Position numbers and translations under genes: made by a program. The notes under the pieces are model-generated. The model had not been told where the DNA came from, made no database searches, and was given only the letters and a program-made list of their open reading frames with translations. A DNA stretch of 64,000 nucleotides. It comes from Monocercomonoides exilis PA203. Lineage: Eukaryota > Protista > Preaxostyla. Where the stretch lies: contig LSRY02000016.1 of the NCBI GenBank assembly GCA_001643675.2, positions 1,671,696 to 1,735,695 on the forward strand, in the 5' to 3' direction. This document shows positions 33,772 to 55,309 of this stretch, piece after piece. Each line of letters starts with the position of its first letter. Positions within the stretch are counted from its first letter, which is position 1.

Positions 33772-36564
33772 TCAAAACATTTTTTCCGATTTGTAGGCAA
33801 ACTGCAAAATGCTGTTACAATTGACGTTGCAGCCGACAAGAGTTTTCATATTTTCAAGTTCTCTACCTTTTGATAGAAGCACTTGAAGATTCAAAGGGAT
33901 TCCCACTTCTGCTTGAATCTTCTGCTTTACAGACACAACTGTATCTGTTCTGTTGACAATTAAACAATTCGAATTTCCATCCAGCATCTTCACAAAAATG
34001 CGTATCTTTTCTGAATCACAATAATCCAGATAAATTAGATCTTCTTTCTGGATTTTGCAATCTTCAAGGGTTTTCCTTTCTTCAAGTTCTTTTCCCAAGT
34101 AGATAAGCCTTTGCAGATTCTTCGGGGTCCCTTCTTTGTCTTGAATCTTCTGCTTAACAGAATCAACAGTATCTGTTTTATCAACGTACAAACGAACAAC
34201 TTTTCCGCACTTCCTCCATACAAAAATGAGCATTTTGGAAGGAGAATTAAAAGTAAGATGAAGAATGTCATTGCTATTGATGTGATAGTCTTGTAGAGTT
34301 TTTCTGTTTTCAAGTTCCACATCTTTGAATTTCAATATTTGCTTCTGAAGAGGAACGCCTTCTCTCTCTTCAATCATCTCCTTAATAGATTCAATAGTAT
34401 CAACACGTTCAACGTTAAGAGCGATGTCTTTTTTTGGTGATACATTCACAATTATCTTCATATCACCACGATTCAAGTAAAGGCGAATGATATCCTCATT
34501 TTTCACCTTGCAGTATATCAGTTTTTTTTCGTTTTCATGAAATTTCCCATTAAAATAGAGGCTTTGGTCTTCTACAGGAATTTTCAGCTCTTGTTGAATT
34601 TTTCTTTTTAAGTCGAGTATTTTTTGATCAGCATCCATAACAACTGAAAAAATCTCGCCTGTCCTATTTAAAAGATAGAACATAATTTTGTTGCTGGGCT
34701 TTCGCGAAAGTTTCCATAATTCAATATAAGAATTTTTGTAATCTTGAACAGTCTTCGTGTTTTTAAGTTCCTCACCTTTATATTTCAGAACCTGCTCCAA
34801 AAGAGGAATTTTTTCATATAACTCAATCTTTTCCTTCACAGATTCAATTGTATCTGTGCTATTTACCTCAAAATGGATGGTGTTTTTTTCAAGATCCTCC
34901 ACATAAATTAGCATATTATTCTGCAAAAGCAAAAGGTGAAGGATGTCTCCTTTCCGAACTTCGAAATCTTGAAGAGTATCTTCGTCTTGAATTTCTTTGC
35001 TTTTATATGTGAGGATTTGTTGCTCCGGAGCGAATCCCAGTTCTGCTTGAATCTGCCGCTTCACAGATACAATTGTATCTGTTCTGTTGACAATTAAAGA
35101 AATTGCATTTCCATCCGGCATCTTCACAAAAATGTGCATTTTTGCTGGAGGTCTCAATTTTAGATAAATGGTATCTTCTTTCTGGATTTTGCAATCTTCA
35201 AGGGTTTTCCATTCTTCAAGTTCTCTTCCTGCGTAGACAAGCCTTTGAAGATCCTTCGGGATTCCTTCTTTGTCTTTAATCTTCTGCTTTACAGATTCAA
35301 CAGTATCTGATCCTTCCGCAGCGAGAATGATGCTTTTCCCATGCAAATCCTTCACGAAAAATTGCATTGGGGAAGGAGGACTCGCCATTAAGTGTAGAGC
35401 TTTTTCTTTCTCGGCATAGAGGTGTCGAAGCTCCTTTCCATCTTCTAGTTCTTTTCCTTCACATGCGAGTCTTGGCATATGTGAAGACATAACTTCTTTG
35501 TCTTGAATCATCTGCTTCACAGATTCATCATCATCTTTATCTTCGATGCCAAGAGTAATATTTTCTCTGGTTGATGAATTCTCCTTAATTTTCCGTTCAC
35601 CAGTCATTCCCAAAAGGTGAATGATATCCAATTCCGTAATATTGTAGTCCGAAAGAGTTTTTCTGTTATCAAGTTGAATTCCTCCAAAAGCGAGAATTTG
35701 TAAATCTAGAGGGATTCCTTCTTTCTCTTGAATTTTCTGTTTCACTGATTCAATGGTATCTTCGCTCTTGACATCAAGAAAAACTTCTTTTTGATCCGGT
35801 TTCTTCACAGAAATATGAATTATTGAAACATTCACGATAAGGACAAGAAAGTCTTCTTCTTGGATGTGGTAATCTTGTAGAGTTTTTCTGTTTTCAAGTT
35901 CCTCATGTTTAAATGTCAATATTTGCTCCTTTGGAGGAATGTTTTCTACATCTTCAATCATCTCCTTAATAAATTCAACTGTATCTGTGCACTTAACTGT
36001 AAAGGTGATGGAGTATCCAACAGATATCGATACAATAATACTCATATGCTTATCAGCGACAAAATTGTGTTCAATATTCCTGCAGCTAACCATGCTTTGC
36101 GACAAGGCATTTTCAGATTCAGCAAATTCTGTAGGAAGACTATTGCATTGACTTTTAAAATGACTGTAAGCCATTTTTTGTGGTCTTTCTTCATAAGCAT
36201 GTCTCAATTGATCGACGTCCATTTCAATTGTGAAATCTTCTCTTGATCTTTCATTTAAAAATTGATCTCCACCTTGATATTTTTTCAGTTGATGGGCGCT
36301 AACAATTCCTGCTTGTTGCATTATTTTTTCTGCTTGAACTCCCTCTTCTCCAAATTTGTTCATTTGCTGATCCAGCAAGTAAACTTCTTTGTCTTGAATA
36401 TTCTGTTCAGCCGATTCATCAGCATCTTTCTCTTCTACATCTAGAGTGATGTACTTTTCACAATAATCCTTTAATAACAATGGATTTTCCATTAAGCTCA
36501 TTTTGTTCAAATACTCAATGATCAGAAAATACATAATTGTATTTAAAAATGGCATAAACTGCAT
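33772..36564 (-). CDS. Tandem ubiquitin-like domain protein (~9 clear + 2 degenerate UBLs, no di-glycine)
   Basis: Repeats such as [72 protein letters not shown] align to ubiquitin. No LRGG at any junction or at the C-terminus. First ATG at 36564 (the ORF track starts at TTG 36600). Confidence 0.9.
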
Positions 36565-39500
36565 TGAAATTGAATTTTTTTGAAAGCTGATAAAAATCAA
36601 AGCTTTGTGGTTATTATAGATCCACAGTCAAAGGCAAAAGAACATAACAATTATTTTGAATCAAATCGTTTTTGTAATGATATTAAACTTGACAAATATT
36701 AATATTATTTATTTTTTTATTTTTTAATTGAATTGTTATAAAAAGAAATTGATTAAAAAAAAAGATTAATGTGACAAAATAATTTGATATTCACTATTTG
36801 AATTTTATAAAGATATGGGGCGACATTTTTTCTTTTAGAAAAAAACTTTGTTTTGTTCCAAACTTTTTCCCTATCATATCAAAAAATATCAAACATTCCC
36901 ATGCTTAAGTGTGAAGAAAAAAAGAAAATTGATAAAAACATCAAAAATAATTTGGTGGAACAAAATTCATAAAGCCTGAAATTTCATCCCGTATGGTGAT
37001 CGCTTTTTTTATTTGATTCATGAAATCAGTGTTGAATTTTGAAGAGAATTAGTAAGATATAAATGAATGAAATTGAACAAATATTCCCTAAATTTATCAG
37101 TTGTCATTTTTTGTTTATTGAAACATTGTGAGAAAGTGTGAAATTTTAAATGGTCTCTGCACTTTTGTTAGCATATCTTTGATATTCTCTTTTTGATCTT
37201 AAGATTCCTTTAATGAAGCAATATCATGACAATTTATAAAAAAAATCTAAAATGAAATTCCTAGCTTTATTATACCTCTAAAAGTTTTTTATTTGACTCA
37301 TTTGAAATGAAACACACAAATTAGTTTAATTTGATTTTTTCAAAGTTCATAAAGAAATAAAAGAGAAATTTAGGCATTCCTATCTTCTGTATCTACCCGA
37401 AGAAGATTGAAATGCCAGCTTTGAAAATGCTGTTCGGATATAAAATGATGCAGATGCAGCCCATAAACAACCACAGCTATATCCACAAATGACTGCTCCA
37501 TATTCTTTTGGTTTCGCTTCGTCCAAAGAGAGGAGAAAAAGATCACCCAAAAAAAATTGACGAGGAATCAATAAATTGTTCTACAACGCAAATTCTTCCT
37601 CTCTTTCCCTCTTCCTCTTCCTTTTTCATCCCTTTCATCTTCATGCGACTCATTTCATAACATGTCTCCTCCTATCAATTCAACTTCACATTCCGTCTTC
37701 GCTTTTCTTCTTCGTTTTTGCGTCATTACCAGCCATCTGCGCTTCTTTCTCTTTGACAAAAATTTCTTTCTTTGCGTCCTTACTCAATTTCACCATCATC
37801 GTATCAGTCTTGTTGAACATTCACCACCAGGGTATCTTCCCTTCCTTTCCCAAGCTCCACATCTCTTCCCGTCCCAATCGCACTTTTCATTGAAGCTATC
37901 CTCAAACACACATCAGCTTTCTTCTTCTTCTTCTTTTGCTTCTTCTTCTGCTTCTGCTTCTGTTGTTGTTGCTGCTGCTGCATTCTCATCTCCTCTGTGT
38001 ATTCCAATATGACTCCGCAGGCGCGCAAAGAAAGGGGAGAAGATAGCATCTGTGTGTTCGATTACACTTCAAGGGAATCTCCTCCTCTGACTTCGCCTTC
38101 ACAAGCTTCAGCTTCTCCAGCACAAGCCCCTTCTCAATCAGCAGCACTATCGCTTCTTCCACTTTTCCGTACAACTCATTCCGTCTTTCCACAAACTGAT
38201 AGTCTACTGTTGGTTGCCACATTTCCATCTTTTCCTCCCCTTTCTCCTTCCTCTGCTTCTTCTTTCCCATCCTGTTCATCCAGCACAACCGCTAAAAGCG
38301 ATAGAGCCTCATCTTCCCTATTTATTCCAGACACTCCAGCGCCTTCTCGATAATCTCACCCACTTCGAACATCGCAGCCCCCTTTCCACATCGCTTCTTC
38401 GTCCAATTTCTTCTTGTTGAATTTCTTTCTTTTGGTGTCTCAATCAGCAGTGATTAATCAATCAGATCGTAGATCGATGAGAGAGCATTCACGTCCTTCG
38501 CTTCCACAAAGATCAACTTGTTCACCGACTTCGTGTCCATCGAAACTGCAAGCATCTTAAGCGGCGCCACCAGCGGAACAGAAAGCATCGCTTAAAACTC
38601 AACATTGTGTTCACACATTCAACACTCCCACGCAGCACTGCCTGCCGAACTGCAACATATCCCCTCAGCGTCTGCAGCACCAGAGCAGAGACAGAAGCAG
38701 CAATAGCAGCAGCCGTTTGTGCCGCGCCTACACTCCAGTTGCCTCTTGATGTCGTCCTTATCCATTTTCGACACATCTGAAGTGACAGTTGCAGAAGCCA
38801 ATAATAATAATCATTACAACAACAATGACGGCTCATCCCCTTTGCTTCTTTTCCACCGGAATGCAGAAGAAGAACAGAACGCAGTTTTAGACGAGGCAGA
38901 CGAGGCAGTCGTCGTTGACGAAGAAGGCGAAGAGAGAAGAACGAAGAACAAAGTGAACACATCTGAAATTCTTCTGAAAAAAGTCGCTTTTTGAAAAAGG
39001 TCTTAAATCTGTCAGCAACTCCATAGGCAACAAAAAGATGAACATCCGCATTCGTATAAGAAGGGTTGATCATTGTGAAAGCTTGTTATTTTCGAGCAAT
39101 GGGAAAAGGAGGCAGCAGGGTTTCTTCAAAAGATGAGTTCAAATAAGTGGAAGAAGAATCAGAAATATCAGAAGAAGAAGAAGAAGATTTGTATGCTGAC
39201 AATTATTGAATTAGCATTCTGCTCTCACATCAGATAAATTAGATGAATAACAAATGAAAAGATCAATCCGTAATCAACGAGTATCGCAATTGATGTAATT
39301 TGCTCATTCTGTTGGTTAAAAGCAAAATTCACCACAATCTTCAGTCATTTTGCACACACAACAATAAAAACGTAAATGTTTGCTGTTCAGAACTCAACAC
39401 TTAAAAACTGTAAAGCTCCTATTCCAGATGAAAGGCAATTTTTCTTGGTTTGTATGATATAAGTTGTCTGTCTTCATTCCCCATTCACAATAAGATGCAT

Positions 39501-48601: not shown

Positions 48602-49673
48602 GGCAAGACGCTACTTTAAAGGCACCAGATTTTTTTGTTAAATCCATGAATAAATAGCTAAAAAATACAATGTTAAGATATTATAAATATATTCGGTTTA
48701 TAATAACCAATTGATCAAAACAAAAAATGATAGAATGGTCTTATTAAAAAAATCTTAAATTTTTCGAGACTTTTTTCAAACTTCATTTAAATACTAAACT
48801 TGAGCTTTTTGCAACCCAAACAACTGCATATAGCAATAAAATTCAAATTTAAAAACCAAAAAATGTCTTTTTATTGTTATTTAATTAATTCTCCAAAAAA
48901 AAATTACTCAAAATTTCAATGAGGGGACAGTTGTTTTTGAGAACGAAAACCCAAAAATATAAAAATGATAACTTAAACATATAGTCAACACCAAAGAGTG
49001 TTGATGAAAGTTCACTCGAAAACAATTAGCATTTTCATAAAGCTCGTTTTTAATTTTTTAGGTACCCTTTAAGTAGCCTTATGCCAAGATTTTGAAGGCA
49101 AAGGAGATCTTTTTTTAAATTCTTGTTCTTTATCATCCTCCTCTTCTTCCACTTTCTCTAAATTACAGTTTGAGGAAGATTGCTAATAATATTTCAATAT
49201 CAACCGCTTATCTCGCTTCTTGCCTTTTTCCGATTTCTTGACTGATTTTATGCAAGAAAAAATCGACTCAAAAATTTCAGTTAATATTGTGAAATGCAAA
49301 TGAATGGAAAAAAATAGTTTTATCTGAATCAATCAACTCAGGTCTATGGAAGTTATTACAAAAAAGAAAACAGACTAGTATGACAAATCTTAGAAGTCAA
49401 AAATTCAAAGAATGAAATGATACACATATTTGGACAGAAGATATCAAAACAACAAAAAAACAAAGGCAGAAGTTAAAAAAGAATGGTTTTTGAAGCATGT
49501 CCAAATATCCATGAAAAGAGTGAAAATCTTTTCAAAAAAGAAAGAAAGAACTTTCCAATGAAATACATTTCATCTCATGAATGTCAAAGGTTTTTGTTCA
49601 GACATGCTGTGAAATGTTGATTCGTTTAAGCTCAGTAAACGAATTTCAGCTCCTAAGAAATGCTCTTTCGCAA

Positions 49674-52600
49674 TTATGTTGAATTATCAGTCTTCATCCA
49701 TTCTGGTGGATCAGTTATCAAATTGTTTTTCCAATAATCAACCATCGCGTCACCATCCTTATCGCGAATCATGATGCCATGTCTCATCCATTCCGGCGGT
49801 TCTGTATTCACACCTTGAATCCAGTGCATGGCCATTGTACTTCCATATTTATTACATAGCGTTATTCCGTGCCTCATCCATTCTGGTGGCTCTGTTTTAA
49901 CATTAGCAATCCAGTACATGGCCATTGTGCTTCCATATTTATTACATAGCGTTATTCCGTGCCTCATCCATTCTGGTGGATCTGTTTTAACATATGCAAT
50001 CCAGTACATGGCCATTGTGTTTCCTTTTTTATCGCGAATCATGATGTCGTGTCTCATCCACTCTGGTGGCTCTGCTTTGACATTCACAATCCACTGCATA
50101 GCCATTGTGCTTCCTTTTTTATCGCTAATTGCTGTGTCATGTCTCATCCATTCCGGCGGTTCTTTCTTCGCATTCTCTATCCACATCATTGCCATTGTTT
50201 CTCCACATTCATTGGTAAATGTGATATTGTGTCTCATCCATTCTGGTGGATCTGTTTTAACATATGCAATCCAGTACATGGCCATTGCCCAGCCGTCAAT
50301 ATCTTTGAGTGTTTTTTCATGTCTCATCCATTCCGGCGGTTCTGTCTTCACTTCTTTAATCCAGCGCATGGCCATTGTCATTCCAATTATATCTTTGAGT
50401 GATGTGTCATGTCTCATCCATTCTGGTGGGTCTGTTTTGACGTATTCAATCCAGCACATAGCCATTGTCTGTCCTTTCAAACCACATTTAATTGTTATAT
50501 CGTGTCTCATCCACTTTGGTGGCTCTGTCTTCACTTCTTGAATCCAGTGCATGGCCATTGTCATTCCAATTATATCTTTGAGTGATGTGTCATGTCTCAT
50601 CCATTCTGGTGGCTCTGTTTGAACAAATTGAATCCATATCATGGCAATTGTCATTCCAATAATACCTTTGAGTGATGCATCATGTCTCATCCATTTTGGT
50701 GGGTCTGTCTTTACATTTGTAATCCAGCGCATGGCCATTGTCATTCCAATAATATCTTTGAGTGATGTGTCATGTCTCATCCATTCTGGAGGGTCTGTTT
50801 GAACATAGTGAATCCATATCATAGCCATTGTTGATTCAAAATTGTTTCGAAGTGTAATGTCGTGTCTCATCCACTCTGGTGGCTCTGCTTTGACATTCAC
50901 AATCCACTGCATAGCCATTGTGCTTCCTTTTTTATCGCTAATTGCTGTGTCATGTCTCATCCATTCCGGCGGTTCTGTATTCACATTCTCTATCCAGTGC
51001 ATGGCCATTGTACTTCCATATTTATTACATAGCGTTATTCCGTGCCTCATCCATTCTGGTGGATCTGTTTTAACATATGCAATCCAGTACATGGCCATTG
51101 TGCTTCCATATTTATTACATAGCGTTATTCCGTGCCTCATCCATTCTGGTGGATCTGTTTTAACATATGCAATCCAGTACATGGCCATTGTGTTTCCTTT
51201 TTTATCGCGAATCATGATGTCGTGTCTCATCCACTCTGGTGGCTCTGCTTTGACATTCACAATCCACTGCATAGCCATTGTGCTTCCTTTTTTATCGCTA
51301 ATTGCTGTGTCATGTCTCATCCATTCCGGCGGTTCTTTCTTCGCATTCTCTATCCACATCATTGCCATTGTTTCTCCACATTCATTGGTAAATGTGATAT
51401 TGTGTCTCATCCATTCTGGTGGATCTGTTTTAACATATGCAATCCAGTACATGGCCATTGCCCAGCCGTCAATATCTTTGAGTGTTTTTTCATGTCTCAT
51501 CCATTCTGGTGGGTCTGTTTTGACAAACTTGATCCATACCATGGCCATTGTTTCTCCTTTCTTATTTCCAAGCGTTATGCTATGTCTCATCCATTCCGGC
51601 GGTTCTGTCTTCACTTCTTTAATCCAGAGCATGGCCATTGTCCAGCCGTCAATATCTTTGAATGTTTTTTCATGTCTCATCCATTCTGGTGGGTCTGTTT
51701 TGACGTATTCAATCCAGCGCATGGCCATTGTGTTTTCATCTTTATCTGCAAGAGTTATTCCATGCCGCATCCACTTAGGTGGTTCCTTTTTTGTCCAATA
51801 AATCCAAATCATTGCCATTGTTTGCTTTGCTTTATCACAAAAATTGTTGATATGCCTCATCCATTTTGGAGGTTCTGTTCGAACAAATATAATCCATTGC
51901 ATTGACATTGTCCACCCACTATTGTTACATATTGTTTCTTTGTGTCTCATCCATTCTGGTGGATCTGTTTTAGCATTCACAACCCACTTCATCGCCATTG
52001 TGTTTTCATCTTTATCTGCAAGTTCATTGCTATGTCTCATCCATTTTGGAGGGTCTGTTTTAACAGCACGAATCCATATCATGGCCATTGTTTCTCCTTT
52101 CTTATTTCCAAGCGTTATGCCATGTCTCATCCATTCAGATGGATCTGTCTTGACATTTACAATCCAATGCATTGCCATTGTTTCTCCGTTATTGTCAGCA
52201 AATGAAAGACAATGTCTCATCCATTCTGGTGGGTCTGTTTTGACAAACTTGATCCATACCATGGCCATTGTTTCTCCTTTCTTATTTCCAAGCGTTATGC
52301 TATGTCTCATCCATTCCGGCGGTTCTGTCTTCACTTCTTTAATCCAGAGCATGGCCATTGTCCAGCCGTCAATATCTTTGAATGTTTTTTCATGTCTCAT
52401 CCACTTTGGTGGCTCTGTCTTTACATTTGCAATCCAAAGCATTGCCATTGTTTGTCCTTTAAAATCAGAAATTGTTTCGTTGTGCCTCATCCACAAAAGT
52501 GGTTCTGCCTTATTCTTCACAATCCAGCTCATGGCCTCTGTTCTCCCGTAAATATCGCGAATTTTGTTATCATATACCATCCAATCAGGTATGCTTGTCT

Positions 52601-53519
52601 TCACATATTGGCTCCACAACATCATCATTGTTTGTCCTTTCATATCACAAAGTTTGTTATTATGTCTCATCCATTTCGGTGGATCTGTTTTAACAAATAT
52701 TATCCAAAGCATTGCCATTGTTTGCCCATTGTTGTTAAAAATAGCTTCGTTGTGTCTCATCCATTCAGGTGGATCTGTTTTTATATTCATGATCCATTGC
52801 ATAGCCATCGTTGATCCTTTTTTATCGCCAAGAGTTATACCATGTCTCATCCATTCCGGTGGTTCTGTTTTAACATTTGCAATCCAGTACATGTCCACTG
52901 TCCGTCCATCCTTATCGCAAATTGTAACACTGTGTCTCATCCATCTTGGTGGCTCTGTTTTGACGTATTCAATCCAGTGCATGGCAATTGTCCATCCATC
53001 TATATCAGTAAAATTTACTCCATGCCGCATCCATTTAGGTGGATCTGTCTTCACGTATTGAATCCAGTGCATGGCCATTGTACTTCCATATTTATTACAA
53101 AGAGTAATTTCATGTCTCATCCATTCTGGTGGTTCTGTGCGAACACAAGAAATCCAGTGCATGGCCATTGTGCTTCCATATTTATTACAAAGAGTAATTT
53201 CATGTCTCATCCATTCTGGTGGTTCTGTGCGAACACAAGAAATCCAGTGCATGGCCATTGTGCTTCCATATTTATTACATAGCGTTATTCCGTGCCTCAT
53301 CCATTCTGGTGGCTCTGTTTTAACATATGCAATCCAGTGCATGGCCATTGTCCATCCTTCCTCATCGGTAAAAGTTATTCTATGACGAATTTCTAATGGA
53401 GGATCTGTCTTTTTCTCAGCAATCCATAGCATTGCTTGTGTTTTTCCTTTTTCGTCCTTTAAATAGAGATCATTACTCGCATTTTGCACACTTGTTTTAC
53501 ATTCCATTCTGCCGCTCAC
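49674..53519 (-). CDS. Solenoid repeat protein: 42 tandem 30-aa ankyrin-like repeats (xxxxxDxxGxTMAMxWIxxVKT(E/D)PPEWMRH)
   Basis: Uninterrupted 1281-codon ORF with 90-bp periodicity. 42 units counted, one of 31 aa. The D-x-x-G-x-T-x-A-M start resembles the ankyrin DxxGxTxLH turn. First ATG at 53507; an upstream exon is possible. Confidence 0.9.
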   Translation of the reverse strand: MSGRMECKTSVQNASNDLYLKDEKGKTQAMLWIAEKKTDPPLEIRHRITFTDEEGWTMAMHWIAYVKTEPPEWMRHGITLCNKYGSTMAMHWISCVRTEPPEWMRHEITLCNKYGSTMAMHWISCVRTEPPEWMRHEITLCNKYGSTMAMHWIQYVKTDPPKWMRHGVNFTDIDGWTIAMHWIEYVKTEPPRWMRHSVTICDKDGRTVDMYWIANVKTEPPEWMRHGITLGDKKGSTMAMQWIMNIKTDPPEWMRHNEAIFNNNGQTMAMLWIIFVKTDPPKWMRHNNKLCDMKGQTMMMLWSQYVKTSIPDWMVYDNKIRDIYGRTEAMSWIVKNKAEPLLWMRHNETISDFKGQTMAMLWIANVKTEPPKWMRHEKTFKDIDGWTMAMLWIKEVKTEPPEWMRHSITLGNKKGETMAMVWIKFVKTDPPEWMRHCLSFADNNGETMAMHWIVNVKTDPSEWMRHGITLGNKKGETMAMIWIRAVKTDPPKWMRHSNELADKDENTMAMKWVVNAKTDPPEWMRHKETICNNSGWTMSMQWIIFVRTEPPKWMRHINNFCDKAKQTMAMIWIYWTKKEPPKWMRHGITLADKDENTMAMRWIEYVKTDPPEWMRHEKTFKDIDGWTMAMLWIKEVKTEPPEWMRHSITLGNKKGETMAMVWIKFVKTDPPEWMRHEKTLKDIDGWAMAMYWIAYVKTDPPEWMRHNITFTNECGETMAMMWIENAKKEPPEWMRHDTAISDKKGSTMAMQWIVNVKAEPPEWMRHDIMIRDKKGNTMAMYWIAYVKTDPPEWMRHGITLCNKYGSTMAMYWIAYVKTDPPEWMRHGITLCNKYGSTMAMHWIENVNTEPPEWMRHDTAISDKKGSTMAMQWIVNVKAEPPEWMRHDITLRNNFESTMAMIWIHYVQTDPPEWMRHDTSLKDIIGMTMAMRWITNVKTDPPKWMRHDASLKGIIGMTIAMIWIQFVQTEPPEWMRHDTSLKDIIGMTMAMHWIQEVKTEPPKWMRHDITIKCGLKGQTMAMCWIEYVKTDPPEWMRHDTSLKDIIGMTMAMRWIKEVKTEPPEWMRHEKTLKDIDGWAMAMYWIAYVKTDPPEWMRHNITFTNECGETMAMMWIENAKKEPPEWMRHDTAISDKKGSTMAMQWIVNVKAEPPEWMRHDIMIRDKKGNTMAMYWIAYVKTDPPEWMRHGITLCNKYGSTMAMYWIANVKTEPPEWMRHGITLCNKYGSTMAMHWIQGVNTEPPEWMRHGIMIRDKDGDAMVDYWKNNLITDPPEWMKTDNST

Positions 53520-53695
53520 TGTTTCGATTTTGCTGATTATTCTGTAATATATAAAGAGATAATGTCAATTGTTAAAATTACAAAGCTCTCAATATATATT
53601 ATGTATTTGATCACGAGAAAATATAATTTTTTGATATTGGAACTTAACTATTTTTATTAAAGAATTTCAATTTGAATACATTCAATAGACCTGTG

Positions 53696-53729
53696 TGACG
53701 CTTTTTTCCATTTTTGCAGCTGTCTGTCA

Positions 53730-53786
<57 letters not shown>

Positions 53787-54135
53787 AAAAATGAGAAATT
53801 ACAAAACGAAAACTTTTGAAATGAATATATACAAAAATTGTTAAAAAAAGATATCCAACACAGCCCTGGGTGACGTGCTGACTTCTGACGTGAACATTTG
53901 AAATTTTAACGGACGTGACAGATTTTTCCACGTCAGAAAAGAAAAACATTTTGTTGTTTTTATTATTCTAAATAATTCATATTTTAATTGAATATGATTT
54001 TTATTTCAATTTTTGAAACAAGAAAATTCATAAAATTTCTCATCAAAATTTCCATAACACAGTTTTCACTGATGAGTAAGCGGGAATCGGAATTTTGACA
54101 CGTCACTGTCGTCACAAGTCACTGAAGTCACATCC
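53696..54135. promoter_or_regulatory. Cluster of TGACGTG/GTCAC motifs around a 54-nt poly(A), upstream of the repeat gene
   Basis: TGACGTG at 53871 and 53886, GGACGTG at 53911, CACGTCA at 53929 and 54099, several GTCAC, and poly(A) at 53731-53784. Confidence 0.4.
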
Positions 54136-55309
54136 GGTCAGTTTGCGAAAAAGATAAAAGTTAGAAAAAAAGGACTGAACATTTTGGAAAAATATCAAGA
54201 ATGTTAGTTGTTGAAATTCTCTAATTGAAAAAACCATAACTTTTCATTTTTTTCACAGTTTTCTTAATATTGTGAAAAGAATAACCAATTCAAATTCCAA
54301 AAAGAATAAGAAGAATGCACAAAGAAGGACTGTTTCAATTTATTTCCTTTGAAGAAAAATACTCGCTTTTTTCTTTATTTAATTATTCATTGTTTAATTT
54401 TTCAAATTTTCCTTTAAGCTTAATATGAAATGACTTCGTTGGACGGAAAAATTAAAACATATTTCTTTCAAAAACAATATTTGGAAGTTTTCGAAAACGC
54501 ATCTGGGATCTTCAGCAACATGATGGATGATAATGGCTTTTTCAAAAAGAATACTGACACAAGTATCTAATTGGACTAAATGTGAAAAAAAACTGAAAAC
54601 CGACGATGGAAAATTTTTGTGCCGTTTGACGGTCCGAATTTATTGAGATTATTATTGAAAAAATTGGAAAAGCAGGAAAAAATTTCGAAAAGAAGAATTT
54701 AAAATCAAAATTTATGAAAACAATATATTTCACAAGACATGTGGGTAAATATTTTTGAAAAGTGAAATCAGATCAAAAATATGACTCATGGAAGTTAATT
54801 TTTTTACATTCCGTTTCCATCATTCTCATGAAAAAAATGTTTGTTTCACAATAATGTTTGTTGGTTCATAACAAACTTCTTTAAAAGAAGAAAATATTCC
54901 GAATCAAAAAATTATGTATCATATTTTTTGATCAAAATTAAAATATCAGTTTTTCCATGAAAAAGAGCATCATTTGATTGAACCACTTTGCAATTGTTTA
55001 TTAATAAAAAGTGCAAGGTATTTTTCGATTCTTTTTACGAAAAACTCTATTTTCAATGTTTATTCTAATTTTCATTTGTAAAGAATTATTCATTTGCATT
55101 ATGAGCCTGTTCTTAACACAAATGCGAAGATAGAACACACATATTCGATGCAACTGTTAATCGAATAACTTTAGTGGTTTCCATTTAATTTTAACAAATA
55201 AGTATTGTTTTTAATTTATAATTCAATCATGCTTTTTTTTATTGAATAGTTCGCAGTTGATAGCCAACATTTGCTTTTTCAATTTCATAATAGATAAAGA
55301 TATGATTTC

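What the first reader, a model, noticed from the sequence alone, without database searches (positions are those of the whole stretch)
49674..53519. 42-unit, 30-aa repeat protein with a fixed scaffold and hypervariable positions (TALE/PPR/DARPin-like logic)
Seen: an intact ORF in a pseudogene-rich zone, made almost entirely of units xxxxx(D/N)xxGxTMAM-X-WI-XX-VKT(E/D)PP(E/K)WMRH, with no catalytic, signal or TM domain. The scaffold is nearly invariant. The residue after TMAM (H,Y,Q,L,S,V,I,K,R,M,C) and the di-residue after WI (AY,SC,QY,EY,AN,MN,IF,KE,KF,VN,RA,YW,EN,HY,TN,QF,QE,QG) vary freely, as does the loop before G. These sit at i, i+3, i+4, one face of a predicted helix. Known: ankyrin repeats are 33 aa and start DxxGxTxLH; TALE and PPR arrays use a few variable residues per unit to encode ligand specificity. 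Inference: a shortened Trp/Met-rich ankyrin derivative forming a long, potentially programmable binding surface for nucleic acid or protein, for example an intracellular recognition or defence receptor. The ligand cannot be determined from sequence.
Basis: partly seen in the sequence, partly recalled or inferred. Interest (0 to 1): 0.85.

Follow-up and report, generated by a model that had tools for sequence, protein, structure and literature searches.

The report
Divergent 30-residue ankyrin repeat array
This intact, transcribed gene near a chromosome end encodes a 152-kDa protein made of 42 shortened ankyrin-type repeats, one of about 70 such genes in this protist genome; it is an unusual-looking member of the commonest protein-binding repeat class, not a new TALE-like code.

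Summary
Window 49674-53519 (-) is one open frame (first ATG at 53507, 1277 aa) of 42 tandem units. All are exactly 30 aa except one of 31. The scaffold is nearly invariant and seven positions are variable.

The ankyrin guess is supported. Pfam does not detect ankyrin repeats. However, an AlphaFold model built with a family alignment (pLDDT 97.9) matches solved ankyrin arrays only: Z 16.6, 232 residues at 3.3 Å against AnkB R13-24. A profile comparison aligns the unit in register with canonical GxTALM ankyrin units, with a 3-residue deletion in helix 2.

The "programmable code" reading is not supported:
- The variable positions are the same columns that vary in ordinary ankyrin repeats.
- They carry 142 different di-residues, so there is no small alphabet.
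- Their pN/pS is 0.35-0.85, never above 1.
- The protein has no consistently basic charge.

The genome matches the published Monocercomonoides exilis assembly in size and contig number. It holds about 2,100 such units, at least 36 loci and probably about 70 genes. Units are shuffled at half-unit resolution. Metagenomic relatives carry a C-terminal RING finger.

RNA-library contigs cover the ORF but not its flanks.

The scan's first readers noted paralogues of this family on other pieces of the same genome (s1-464718, s1-471304).

Verdict: a new variant of a known kind, of moderate interest.

The parts
49674..53507 (-). Coding sequence, ATG to stop: 1277 aa, 152 kDa, pI 8.06, Met 10.3%, Trp 7.1%. 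Single exon.
   Evidence: the ESM Atlas holds this exact sequence
53382..53507 (-). Short N-terminal leader of 12 aa plus a degenerate first unit acting as N-cap. The unit has the form ..KDEKGKTQAMLWIAEKKTDPP.EIRH. The same cap type occurs in paralogues.
49779..53381 (-). Core array of 40 units, 39 of 30 aa and one of 31 aa. Consensus x-I-T-L-x-D-x-x-G-x-T-M-A-M-x-W-I-x-x-V-K-T-E-P-P-E-W-M-R-H. In each unit the model predicts a helix at residues 12-20 and a one-turn helix at 26-28.
49689..49778 (-). Divergent last unit acting as C-cap (..GDAMVDYWKNN..DPPEWMKT). This cap type is conserved in paralogues and in the metagenomic relatives P0001-P0004.
49775..50074 (.). One copy of a recent internal multi-unit duplication. 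The partner lies at 50948-51247, is 97% identical, and is offset by 1173 nt (13 units).
49435..49673 (-). Probable 3' untranslated region. RNA-library contigs lie at 49435-49516 and across the stop codon (49654-49807); there are none further downstream.

Best explanation
The gene encodes a soluble, domain-less ankyrin-type solenoid built from a divergent 30-residue version of the ankyrin repeat. In each unit, D-x-x-G-x-T forms the finger loop and T-M-A-M-x-W-I-x-x forms the inner helix, equivalent to T-A-L-M-x-A-A of canonical protist and viral ankyrin units. Helix 2 has lost three residues and is reduced to a Pro-Pro kink plus one turn (E-W-M). The invariant Met, Trp, Ile, Pro, Arg and His residues stack from unit to unit to make the core (shown by the model). 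The seven variable residues lie on the finger loop and on the exposed face of helix 1, along the concave groove (inferred). By analogy with all characterised ankyrin arrays, this groove most likely binds one or more proteins or extended peptides, and the protein acts as a scaffold or adaptor (inferred). The family of about 70 genes and 2,100 units diversifies by unit and block duplication and by recombination inside the conserved DNA cores, which re-pairs finger halves with helix halves (shown as a pattern). Purifying selection holds the scaffold.
For: Fold:
- AlphaFold2 with a 130-row family alignment gave pLDDT 97.9 and pTM 0.91.
- All 50 top Foldseek PDB hits are ankyrin arrays or DARPins.
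- VIA-align gave Z 16.6, 232 of 240 residues aligned, rmsd 3.3 Å against AnkB R13-24. Eight units map onto eight 33-residue repeats.
- ESM Atlas structure hits have TM 0.75-0.80 and are all ankyrin clusters. The feature search also returned only ankyrin clusters in its top ten, as a lead only.

Homology:
- hhalign against canonical units gave E 1.8e-6, probability 79%, in register, with a 3-residue gap in helix 2.
- The unit profile hits canonical GxTALM ankyrin proteins at about 1e-13.
- Relatives P0007, P0011 and P0051 score on Pfam Ank_2, and P0007 is above the cut-off.

Variable sites:
- They are the same columns that vary in canonical units.

Selection and expression:
- Scaffold pN/pS is about 0.2.
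- 32 loci examined have open frames of 584-1660 aa.
- RNA-library contigs match the ORF exactly, with zero depth on both flanks.

Mosaic units.

Adaptor hint: relatives carry the same repeat plus a C-terminal RING finger.
Against: - No ligand or localisation is known, so the binding function rests on analogy with other ankyrin arrays.
- Pfam ankyrin models do not match this protein even at E = 1, and a PDB sequence-profile search found nothing.
- I had no model coordinates, so exposure of the variable sites is inferred from the helix phase and the ankyrin alignment, not measured.
- The single-sequence AlphaFold run gave a different, low-confidence all-beta model (pLDDT 63).
- The alignment behind the confident model is mostly made of paralogous segments.
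- The RNA evidence comes from contigs of one study, so it cannot show a full-length transcript or its level.
Confidence: 0.66

Rival explanations
1. Structural or elastic element. The very long arrays (21-49 or more units, beyond one superhelical turn) would serve mainly as cytoskeleton-associated springs or struts, like the ankyrin-only 'protein 21.1' family of Giardia or the 29-repeat spring of NOMPC. Ligand diversity would be secondary.
For: - Array length is 18-49 units per locus, median 29.
- There is no other domain.
- The fold matches the long AnkB and ankyrin-1 arrays best.
- Some paralogues begin with M-G-N, resembling an N-myristoylation site that could anchor them.
- The comparison with Giardia and NOMPC is from my own knowledge, not a tool result.
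Against: - The variable groove residues and about 70 diverged paralogues suggest many different partners.
- There are no localisation data.
- This gene itself lacks the M-G start.
Confidence: 0.15
2. Diversifying recognition repertoire. The family would be an intracellular receptor or E3-substrate-adaptor repertoire in an arms race with viruses or bacteria. New specificities would arise by shuffling half-units.
For: - Half-unit mosaics and recent block duplications.
- This copy lies about 7 kb from a telomere.
- Relatives carry a RING finger.
- One relative sits on a gene-dense contig with SET and UDG genes that looks like a giant virus.
Against: - pN/pS at the variable sites is 0.35-0.85, never above 1.
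- Only 5 of 36 scored loci lie within 30 kb of a contig end, against about 2.7 expected. That excess is not significant.
- The M. exilis members have no RING or other effector domain.
Confidence: 0.11
3. TALE/PPR-like modular nucleic-acid reader. Each unit would read one base through the residue after TMAM and the di-residue after WI.
For: - Strict periodicity and a fixed scaffold with a few variable sites at i, i+3, i+4.
- Designed ankyrin proteins can be selected to bind G-quadruplex DNA (title and abstract of PMC4132713, listed).
Against: - There are 142 di-residues and 381 triplets, with no dominant small alphabet.
- The variable sites are those of ordinary protein-binding ankyrin repeats.
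- Family pI is 5.5-9.2 and most members are mildly acidic.
- The solenoid geometry equals that of AnkB, not of a TALE or PUF superhelix.
Confidence: 0.04
4. Non-functional expanding repeat. The ORF would persist only because a stop-free 90-nt satellite keeps being amplified by unequal crossing-over.
For: Its neighbour is a broken gene. The array is recombinogenic.
Against: - Scaffold pN/pS is about 0.2, with synonymous divergence of 0.1-0.36.
- Of the 119 match pieces listed, 110 contain no stop codon, and the scored loci have open frames of 629-1661 aa.
- N-caps and C-caps are conserved.
- RNA-library contigs are confined to the ORF.
- Relatives exist in other organisms.
Confidence: 0.04

Closest known systems
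Canonical ankyrin repeat (Pfam Ank, Ank_2 etc.; for example AnkB/ankyrin-1 24-repeat arrays)
   Same: L-shaped units stacked into a curved solenoid. A D-x-x-G-x-T finger followed by the inner helix. Variable residues fall at the same columns. Eight units superpose on eight AnkB repeats (Z 16.6, rmsd 3.3 Å). The array has N- and C-terminal capping units.
   Different: The unit is 30 aa, not 33. Helix 2 is cut to one turn after an invariant Pro-Pro. The core is built of Met and Trp (T-M-A-M-x-W-I and E-W-M-R-H) instead of T-P-L-H..A-A and L-L. The second half of the unit is far more conserved than in ordinary repeats. Pfam models do not detect it.
'GxTALM' ankyrin arrays of protists and giant viruses
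   Same: The T-A-L-M-x-A-A motif corresponds to T-M-A-M-x-W-I here. Both are large lineage-specific families of proteins that are mostly or only repeats. They are hit by this family's profile at about 1e-13 and align in register.
   Different: They have 33-aa units with a full helix 2 and are recognised by Pfam. Sequence identity is only about 10-25%.
Metagenomic 29-31-aa relatives with a C-terminal RING finger (P0001-P0004, P0009)
   Same: They have the same unit (..T-M-A-x-x-W-I..K-T-E-P-P-x-W-M-R-H) and the same C-cap. E-values run from 1e-139 to 1e-53.
   Different: They have only 8-12 units and carry a RING domain, so they are probably E3 ligases. The M. exilis proteins have 18-49 units and no RING.
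DARPins (designed ankyrin repeat proteins)
   Same: A fixed framework with a few surface positions carrying the specificity. From my own memory of the design (D-x-x-G-x-T-P-L-H-L-A-A-x-x-G-H...), the randomised positions 33, 2, 3, 5, 13 and 14 correspond to positions 5, 7, 8, 10, 18 and 19 here. PMC8683736 confirms the 33-aa module, the caps and the randomised surface paratope.
   Different: This family is natural, far longer, and has a shortened helix 2. There is no evidence of selected binders.
TALE and PPR arrays
   Same: Tandem units of nearly constant length with a few specificity positions.
   Different: The fold is different. TALEs use a handful of di-residues, whereas 142 occur here. 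There is no nucleic-acid-binding signature. This is a resemblance of layout only.

Membership tests
Ankyrin repeat superfamily | Helix-turn-helix plus finger-loop units that stack into a curved solenoid | tested here: met
   The model has pLDDT 97.9. All top Foldseek hits are ankyrin arrays. Z 16.6 with 232 residues aligned at 3.3 Å. Atlas TM 0.75-0.80. Caveat: helix 2 is only one turn.
Ankyrin repeat superfamily | G-x-T-P/A-L-H/M motif opening helix 1, preceded by a D/N-x-x finger | tested here: met
   D6-x-x-G9-x-T11-M-A-M-x-W-I aligns column for column with D-x-x-G-x-T-A-L-M-x-A-A of 58 canonical units.
Ankyrin repeat superfamily | Unit of about 33 residues with a full second helix (..V..LL..GA..N) | tested here: not met
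   Units are strictly 30 aa across 974 copies. hhalign places a 3-residue deletion in helix 2. DSSP on the model shows only residues 26-28 as helical.
Ankyrin repeat superfamily | Recognition by curated sequence models (Pfam Ank, Ank_2-5) | tested here: not met
   There is no ankyrin family at E up to 1 for this protein. Homology is only transitive: relative P0007 scores 29.8 bits on Ank_2 against a cut-off of 27.3.
Ankyrin repeat superfamily | Statistically supported sequence homology to bona fide ankyrin proteins | tested here: met
   The profile of five units hits P0115, P0127 and P0139 at 2.6e-14 to 3.4e-11 in a library of 1.84 billion proteins. hhalign gives E 1.8e-6. A PDB sequence-profile search was blank.
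Ankyrin repeat superfamily | Binds proteins through the concave groove | not testable with these tools
   No ligand is known. This needs pull-downs or a co-structure.
TALE/PPR-type modular nucleic-acid readers | A small alphabet of specificity residues, one unit per base | tested here: not met
   There are 142 distinct di-residues at positions 18-19, and the commonest (QF) makes up only 10%. There are 381 distinct triplets at positions 15, 18 and 19.
TALE/PPR-type modular nucleic-acid readers | Alpha-solenoid of TALE or PPR geometry | tested here: not met
   All structural matches are ankyrin arrays. No TALE, PPR or PUF entry appears among the matches listed by Foldseek or VIA-align, 50 rows each.

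The most novel reading that the evidence does not exclude
The roughly 70 genes and 2,100 units may form a natural DARPin-like recognition repertoire. New binding surfaces would be generated by recombining finger halves and helix halves at the two conserved DNA cores. The cell would use them, or in RING-bearing relatives the E3 ligases of other protists or giant viruses would use them, to recognise rapidly changing targets such as viral or bacterial proteins.
Probability: 0.1. Interest if true: 0.7.

Novelty: new variant of a known kind. Interest (0 to 1): 0.36.

Why it matters
The result shows that a large gene family in the amitochondriate protist Monocercomonoides exilis is a cryptic ankyrin family. 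The family holds an estimated 2,100 repeat units (about 190 kb) and is invisible to Pfam. It has a naturally minimised 30-residue unit in which the outer helix is almost deleted and the core is built from Met and Trp. This gives a name and a fold to proteins that three first-stage readings of this genome found puzzling. It adds a structurally interesting minimal ankyrin module that could interest repeat-protein designers. It also links the family to RING-bearing relatives in metagenomes. It does not reveal a new recognition code.

Tried and rejected
- **Pfam and NCBIfam hits** (YycE-like_C 1.8e-12, DUF4926, WcaB and others). These are short 20-30-residue matches summed over many repeats, to unrelated families. 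I treat them as repeat artefacts.
- **The search for homologous proteins** with the whole protein found nothing. Only proteins of about 700-2,240 aa are visible to that search, and the relatives found later are 50-700 aa, so the blank means little.
- **PDB sequence-profile search** was blank.
- **IMG/VR scan** with the five-unit profile produced 41 pattern matches, none confirmed.
- **Single-sequence AlphaFold** gave a low-confidence all-beta model (pLDDT 63, three of five models near 30). It was superseded by the alignment-based model.
- **Search for a RING-bearing family member in this genome** found only unrelated RING proteins: one with ubiquitin-like domains plus RING, and one low-complexity protein plus RING.
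- **Subtelomeric enrichment** was not significant: 5 of 36 loci lie within 30 kb of a contig end, against about 2.7 expected.
- **Positive selection at the variable sites** was not seen with nearest-neighbour Nei-Gojobori counts. This crude method ignores recombination and cannot exclude episodic selection.
- **Literature search** for the motif strings and for 'Monocercomonoides' plus 'ankyrin' found no description of the family.

Full report
**1. What is there**

The minus strand of window 49674-53519 carries one uninterrupted frame. The bacterial-code ORF list starts it at a GTG. The first ATG is at 53507 and gives a 1277-aa protein, and the ESM Atlas holds that sequence letter for letter.

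Anchoring on W-M-R-H gives 41 anchors. All are 30 residues apart except one at 31. A degenerate first unit precedes them, so there are 42 units. Tandem Repeats Finder reports period 90 nt and 39.7 copies.

The protein is 152 kDa with pI 8.06. It is 10.3% Met and 7.1% Trp and has no hydrophobic segment long enough for a membrane span. The first and last units are divergent in a way that recurs in paralogues and in foreign relatives, so they act as N-cap and C-cap.

**2. Genome and family**

The window is the last 64 kb of contig C10 in a genome of 82,301,135 bases in 101 contigs. This matches the published long-read assembly of Monocercomonoides exilis PA203, described as 101 contigs and about 82.3 Mbp (PMC8767320). 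The identification rests on those figures and is an inference.

A (TTAGGG)n tract runs from about 60,460 to the end of the window. The gene therefore starts about 7 kb from the telomere.

A six-frame search of the genome with this protein scored 36 distinct loci out of 152 candidate regions, with open frames of 629-1661 aa, and 110 of the 119 match pieces listed contain no stop codon. I cut out 32 loci and found 974 units in them, again almost always exactly 30 aa long.

A degenerate DNA pattern for P-P-[EK]-W-M-R-H occurs 1,322 times in the genome and never in the reversed control. Since 62% of the known units carry that motif, the genome holds roughly 2,100 units. With a median of 29 units per gene, that is about 70 genes.

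Sixteen of the 36 scored loci lie in the first 1.05 Mb of contig C80. Only five lie within 30 kb of a contig end, against about 2.7 expected, so the subtelomeric position of this copy is not a family rule.

**3. What the unit is**

Pfam and NCBIfam give no credible family. A word-indexed protein search and a PDB sequence-profile search were blank.

An exhaustive HMMER search with a five-unit profile found 241 proteins at E ≤ 0.001.
- The best hits (P0001-P0004, 1e-139 to 1e-68) are metagenomic proteins with the same unit at 29-30 aa spacing, the same C-cap and a C-terminal RING finger.
- Two further hits (P0007, P0051) come from a gene-dense eukaryotic assembly.
- One hit (P0148) lies on a contig that looks like a giant virus.
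- At about 1e-13 the hits are ordinary GxTALM ankyrin proteins (P0115, P0127, P0139).
- The intermediates P0007, P0011 and P0051 score on Pfam Ank_2, and P0007 is above the gathering cut-off.

A local hhalign of three-unit profiles aligns the family to canonical units in register (E 1.8e-6, probability 79%). It places a three-residue deletion in helix 2.

**4. Fold**

AlphaFold2 on a single sequence gave a poor all-beta model (pLDDT 63). I discard it.

With an alignment of 84 paralogous eight-unit segments and 45 foreign relatives, all five models reached pLDDT 97.2-97.9 with pTM 0.91. Each unit shows a helix at residues 12-20 and one helical turn at 26-28.

- Foldseek against the PDB returns only ankyrin arrays and DARPins among its top 50.
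- VIA-align gives Z 16.6 with 232 of 240 residues aligned at 3.3 Å to AnkB repeats 13-24, so eight units lie on eight repeats.
- The ESM Atlas structure search gives TM 0.75-0.80 to ankyrin clusters only.

The fold and overall curvature are therefore those of an ankyrin solenoid. The outer helix is reduced to a Pro-Pro kink and one turn.

**5. The 'hypervariable' positions**

High entropy is found at positions 5, 7, 8 and 10 (around the finger-loop glycine) and at positions 15, 18 and 19 (helix 1). In helical phase, 15, 18 and 19 lie opposite the conserved 13, 16, 17 and 20, so they should be exposed. This is an inference, because I had no model coordinates.

The second half of the unit (V-K-T-E-P-P-E-W-M-R-H) is unusually fixed.

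The variable sites carry 142 different di-residues at positions 18-19 and 381 triplets at 15, 18 and 19. The commonest di-residue makes up 10%. There is no small alphabet as in TALEs.

Nearest-neighbour Nei-Gojobori counts over 684 unit pairs give pN/pS of about 0.2 for scaffold codons. Depending on the divergence class, the variable codons give 0.47-0.69 against their own pS and 0.35-0.71 against the global pS, and the highest single site reaches 0.88. No site exceeds 1. This fits relaxed constraint on a surface and is not evidence for diversifying selection. The method is crude and ignores recombination.

**6. How the arrays evolve**

The gene contains recent multi-unit duplications, for example 49775-50074 against 50948-51247 at 97% identity.

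Across the family, 82 pairs of units are identical in their first 33 nt. In codons 15-26, about a third of these pairs are as diverged as random pairs (8 or more differences in 36 nt, against a background mean of 12.7). The reverse comparison gives the same picture.

Mutual information between finger and helix sites is low (0.05-0.13 bit) compared with 0.53 bit between positions 18 and 19.

Units are therefore mosaics whose halves have been re-paired, most simply by recombination or gene conversion in the conserved T-M-A-M-x-W and P-P-E-W-M-R-H DNA cores. This agrees with another first-stage note on the same stretch (s1-465322).

**7. Expression**

Four metatranscriptomic runs from one study hold parts of the stretch. 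Their contigs match exactly, for example 315 nt at 51654-51968 with no differences. They cover 49435-53415. Depth is zero at 49000-49367 and at 53416-54500.

The silent flanks argue against DNA carry-over. However, contigs cannot show a full-length transcript or its level, and the first 90 nt of the coding sequence are not covered.

**8. Function**

Nothing here identifies a ligand. The best-supported mechanism is that of every characterised ankyrin array: the groove formed by finger loops and inner helices binds proteins or extended peptides.

The RING-bearing relatives suggest that this module can serve as the substrate-binding part of E3 ligases. The M. exilis members lack a RING.

Family pI ranges from 5.5 to 9.2 and most members are mildly acidic, which does not favour nucleic-acid binding.

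Other readings remain open at lower probability. They are a structural or elastic role for such long arrays, a recognition repertoire that diversifies by shuffling, and a non-functional repeat.

**9. Verdict**

The TALE/PPR-like 'programmable code' is not supported.

This is a previously undescribed, Pfam-invisible, 30-residue variant of the ankyrin repeat, expanded to about 70 genes in one protist and present in scattered metagenomic relatives. No paper in the searchable library mentions the motif or this family.

I rate it a new variant of a known kind, of moderate interest.

Noticed in passing
window 60460-64000: A (TTAGGG)n telomere tract runs to the end of the window, which is also the end of contig C10. 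It is interrupted seven times by the variant TTCAAACTAGG, so the repeat gene lies about 7 kb from a chromosome end.
   Followed up: partly
window 55361-59687 (+): At least five successive, partly overlapping ORFs (55361-56083, 56087-56989, 57005-57631, 57728-59077, 59058-59687) appear to be a fragmented copy of a very large family. Only the fourth (57728-59077) was tested: it matches at least 94 loci at 68-81% identity, most with open frames of about 2,500-2,600 aa, and 3,119 first-look candidates. Pfam finds nothing in the first four pieces tested.
   Followed up: partly
window 33772-36600 (-): A polyubiquitin gene. The 942-aa open frame has 10 matched ubiquitin stretches (Pfam PF00240, E 7.9e-150).
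   Followed up: no
window 53731-53784: A perfect run of 54 A lies about 220 nt upstream of the gene's ATG. RNA-library contigs appear cut there.
   Followed up: no
L009, L014, L016, L025, L026, L007, L013 (paralogues): Several paralogues start with M-G-N/S followed by small residues, for example MGNKAGS and MGNTENS. This resembles an N-myristoylation signal, so part of the family may be membrane-anchored. The window's gene starts MECK and lacks it.
   Followed up: no
L004, L011, L012, L017, L018, L027, L031 (paralogues): A subset shares an acidic linker and a conserved C-terminal tail of about 35 aa after the C-cap (..LIKE.LQKH.N.SGKK.H....E). It has no Pfam match, and the window's gene lacks it.
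   Followed up: no
G000 contig C80, 74 kb-1.05 Mb: Sixteen of the 36 scored family loci cluster in this 1-Mb stretch, which is 1.3% of the genome.
   Followed up: partly
L033/L034 (metagenome contigs carrying P0148): A distant relative of the repeat sits on a contig of up to 41.5 kb (a second, similar one is 19.9 kb), of which about 15 kb was read; that stretch is gene-dense, mostly of unknown ORFs, and carries SET and uracil-DNA-glycosylase genes. It looks like a giant virus.
   Followed up: partly
model of window 51942-52841: Single-sequence AlphaFold2 turned this helical repeat into long beta strands (pLDDT 63, pTM 0.66). This is a caution against reading folds of orphan repeats from alignment-free models.
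   Followed up: yes
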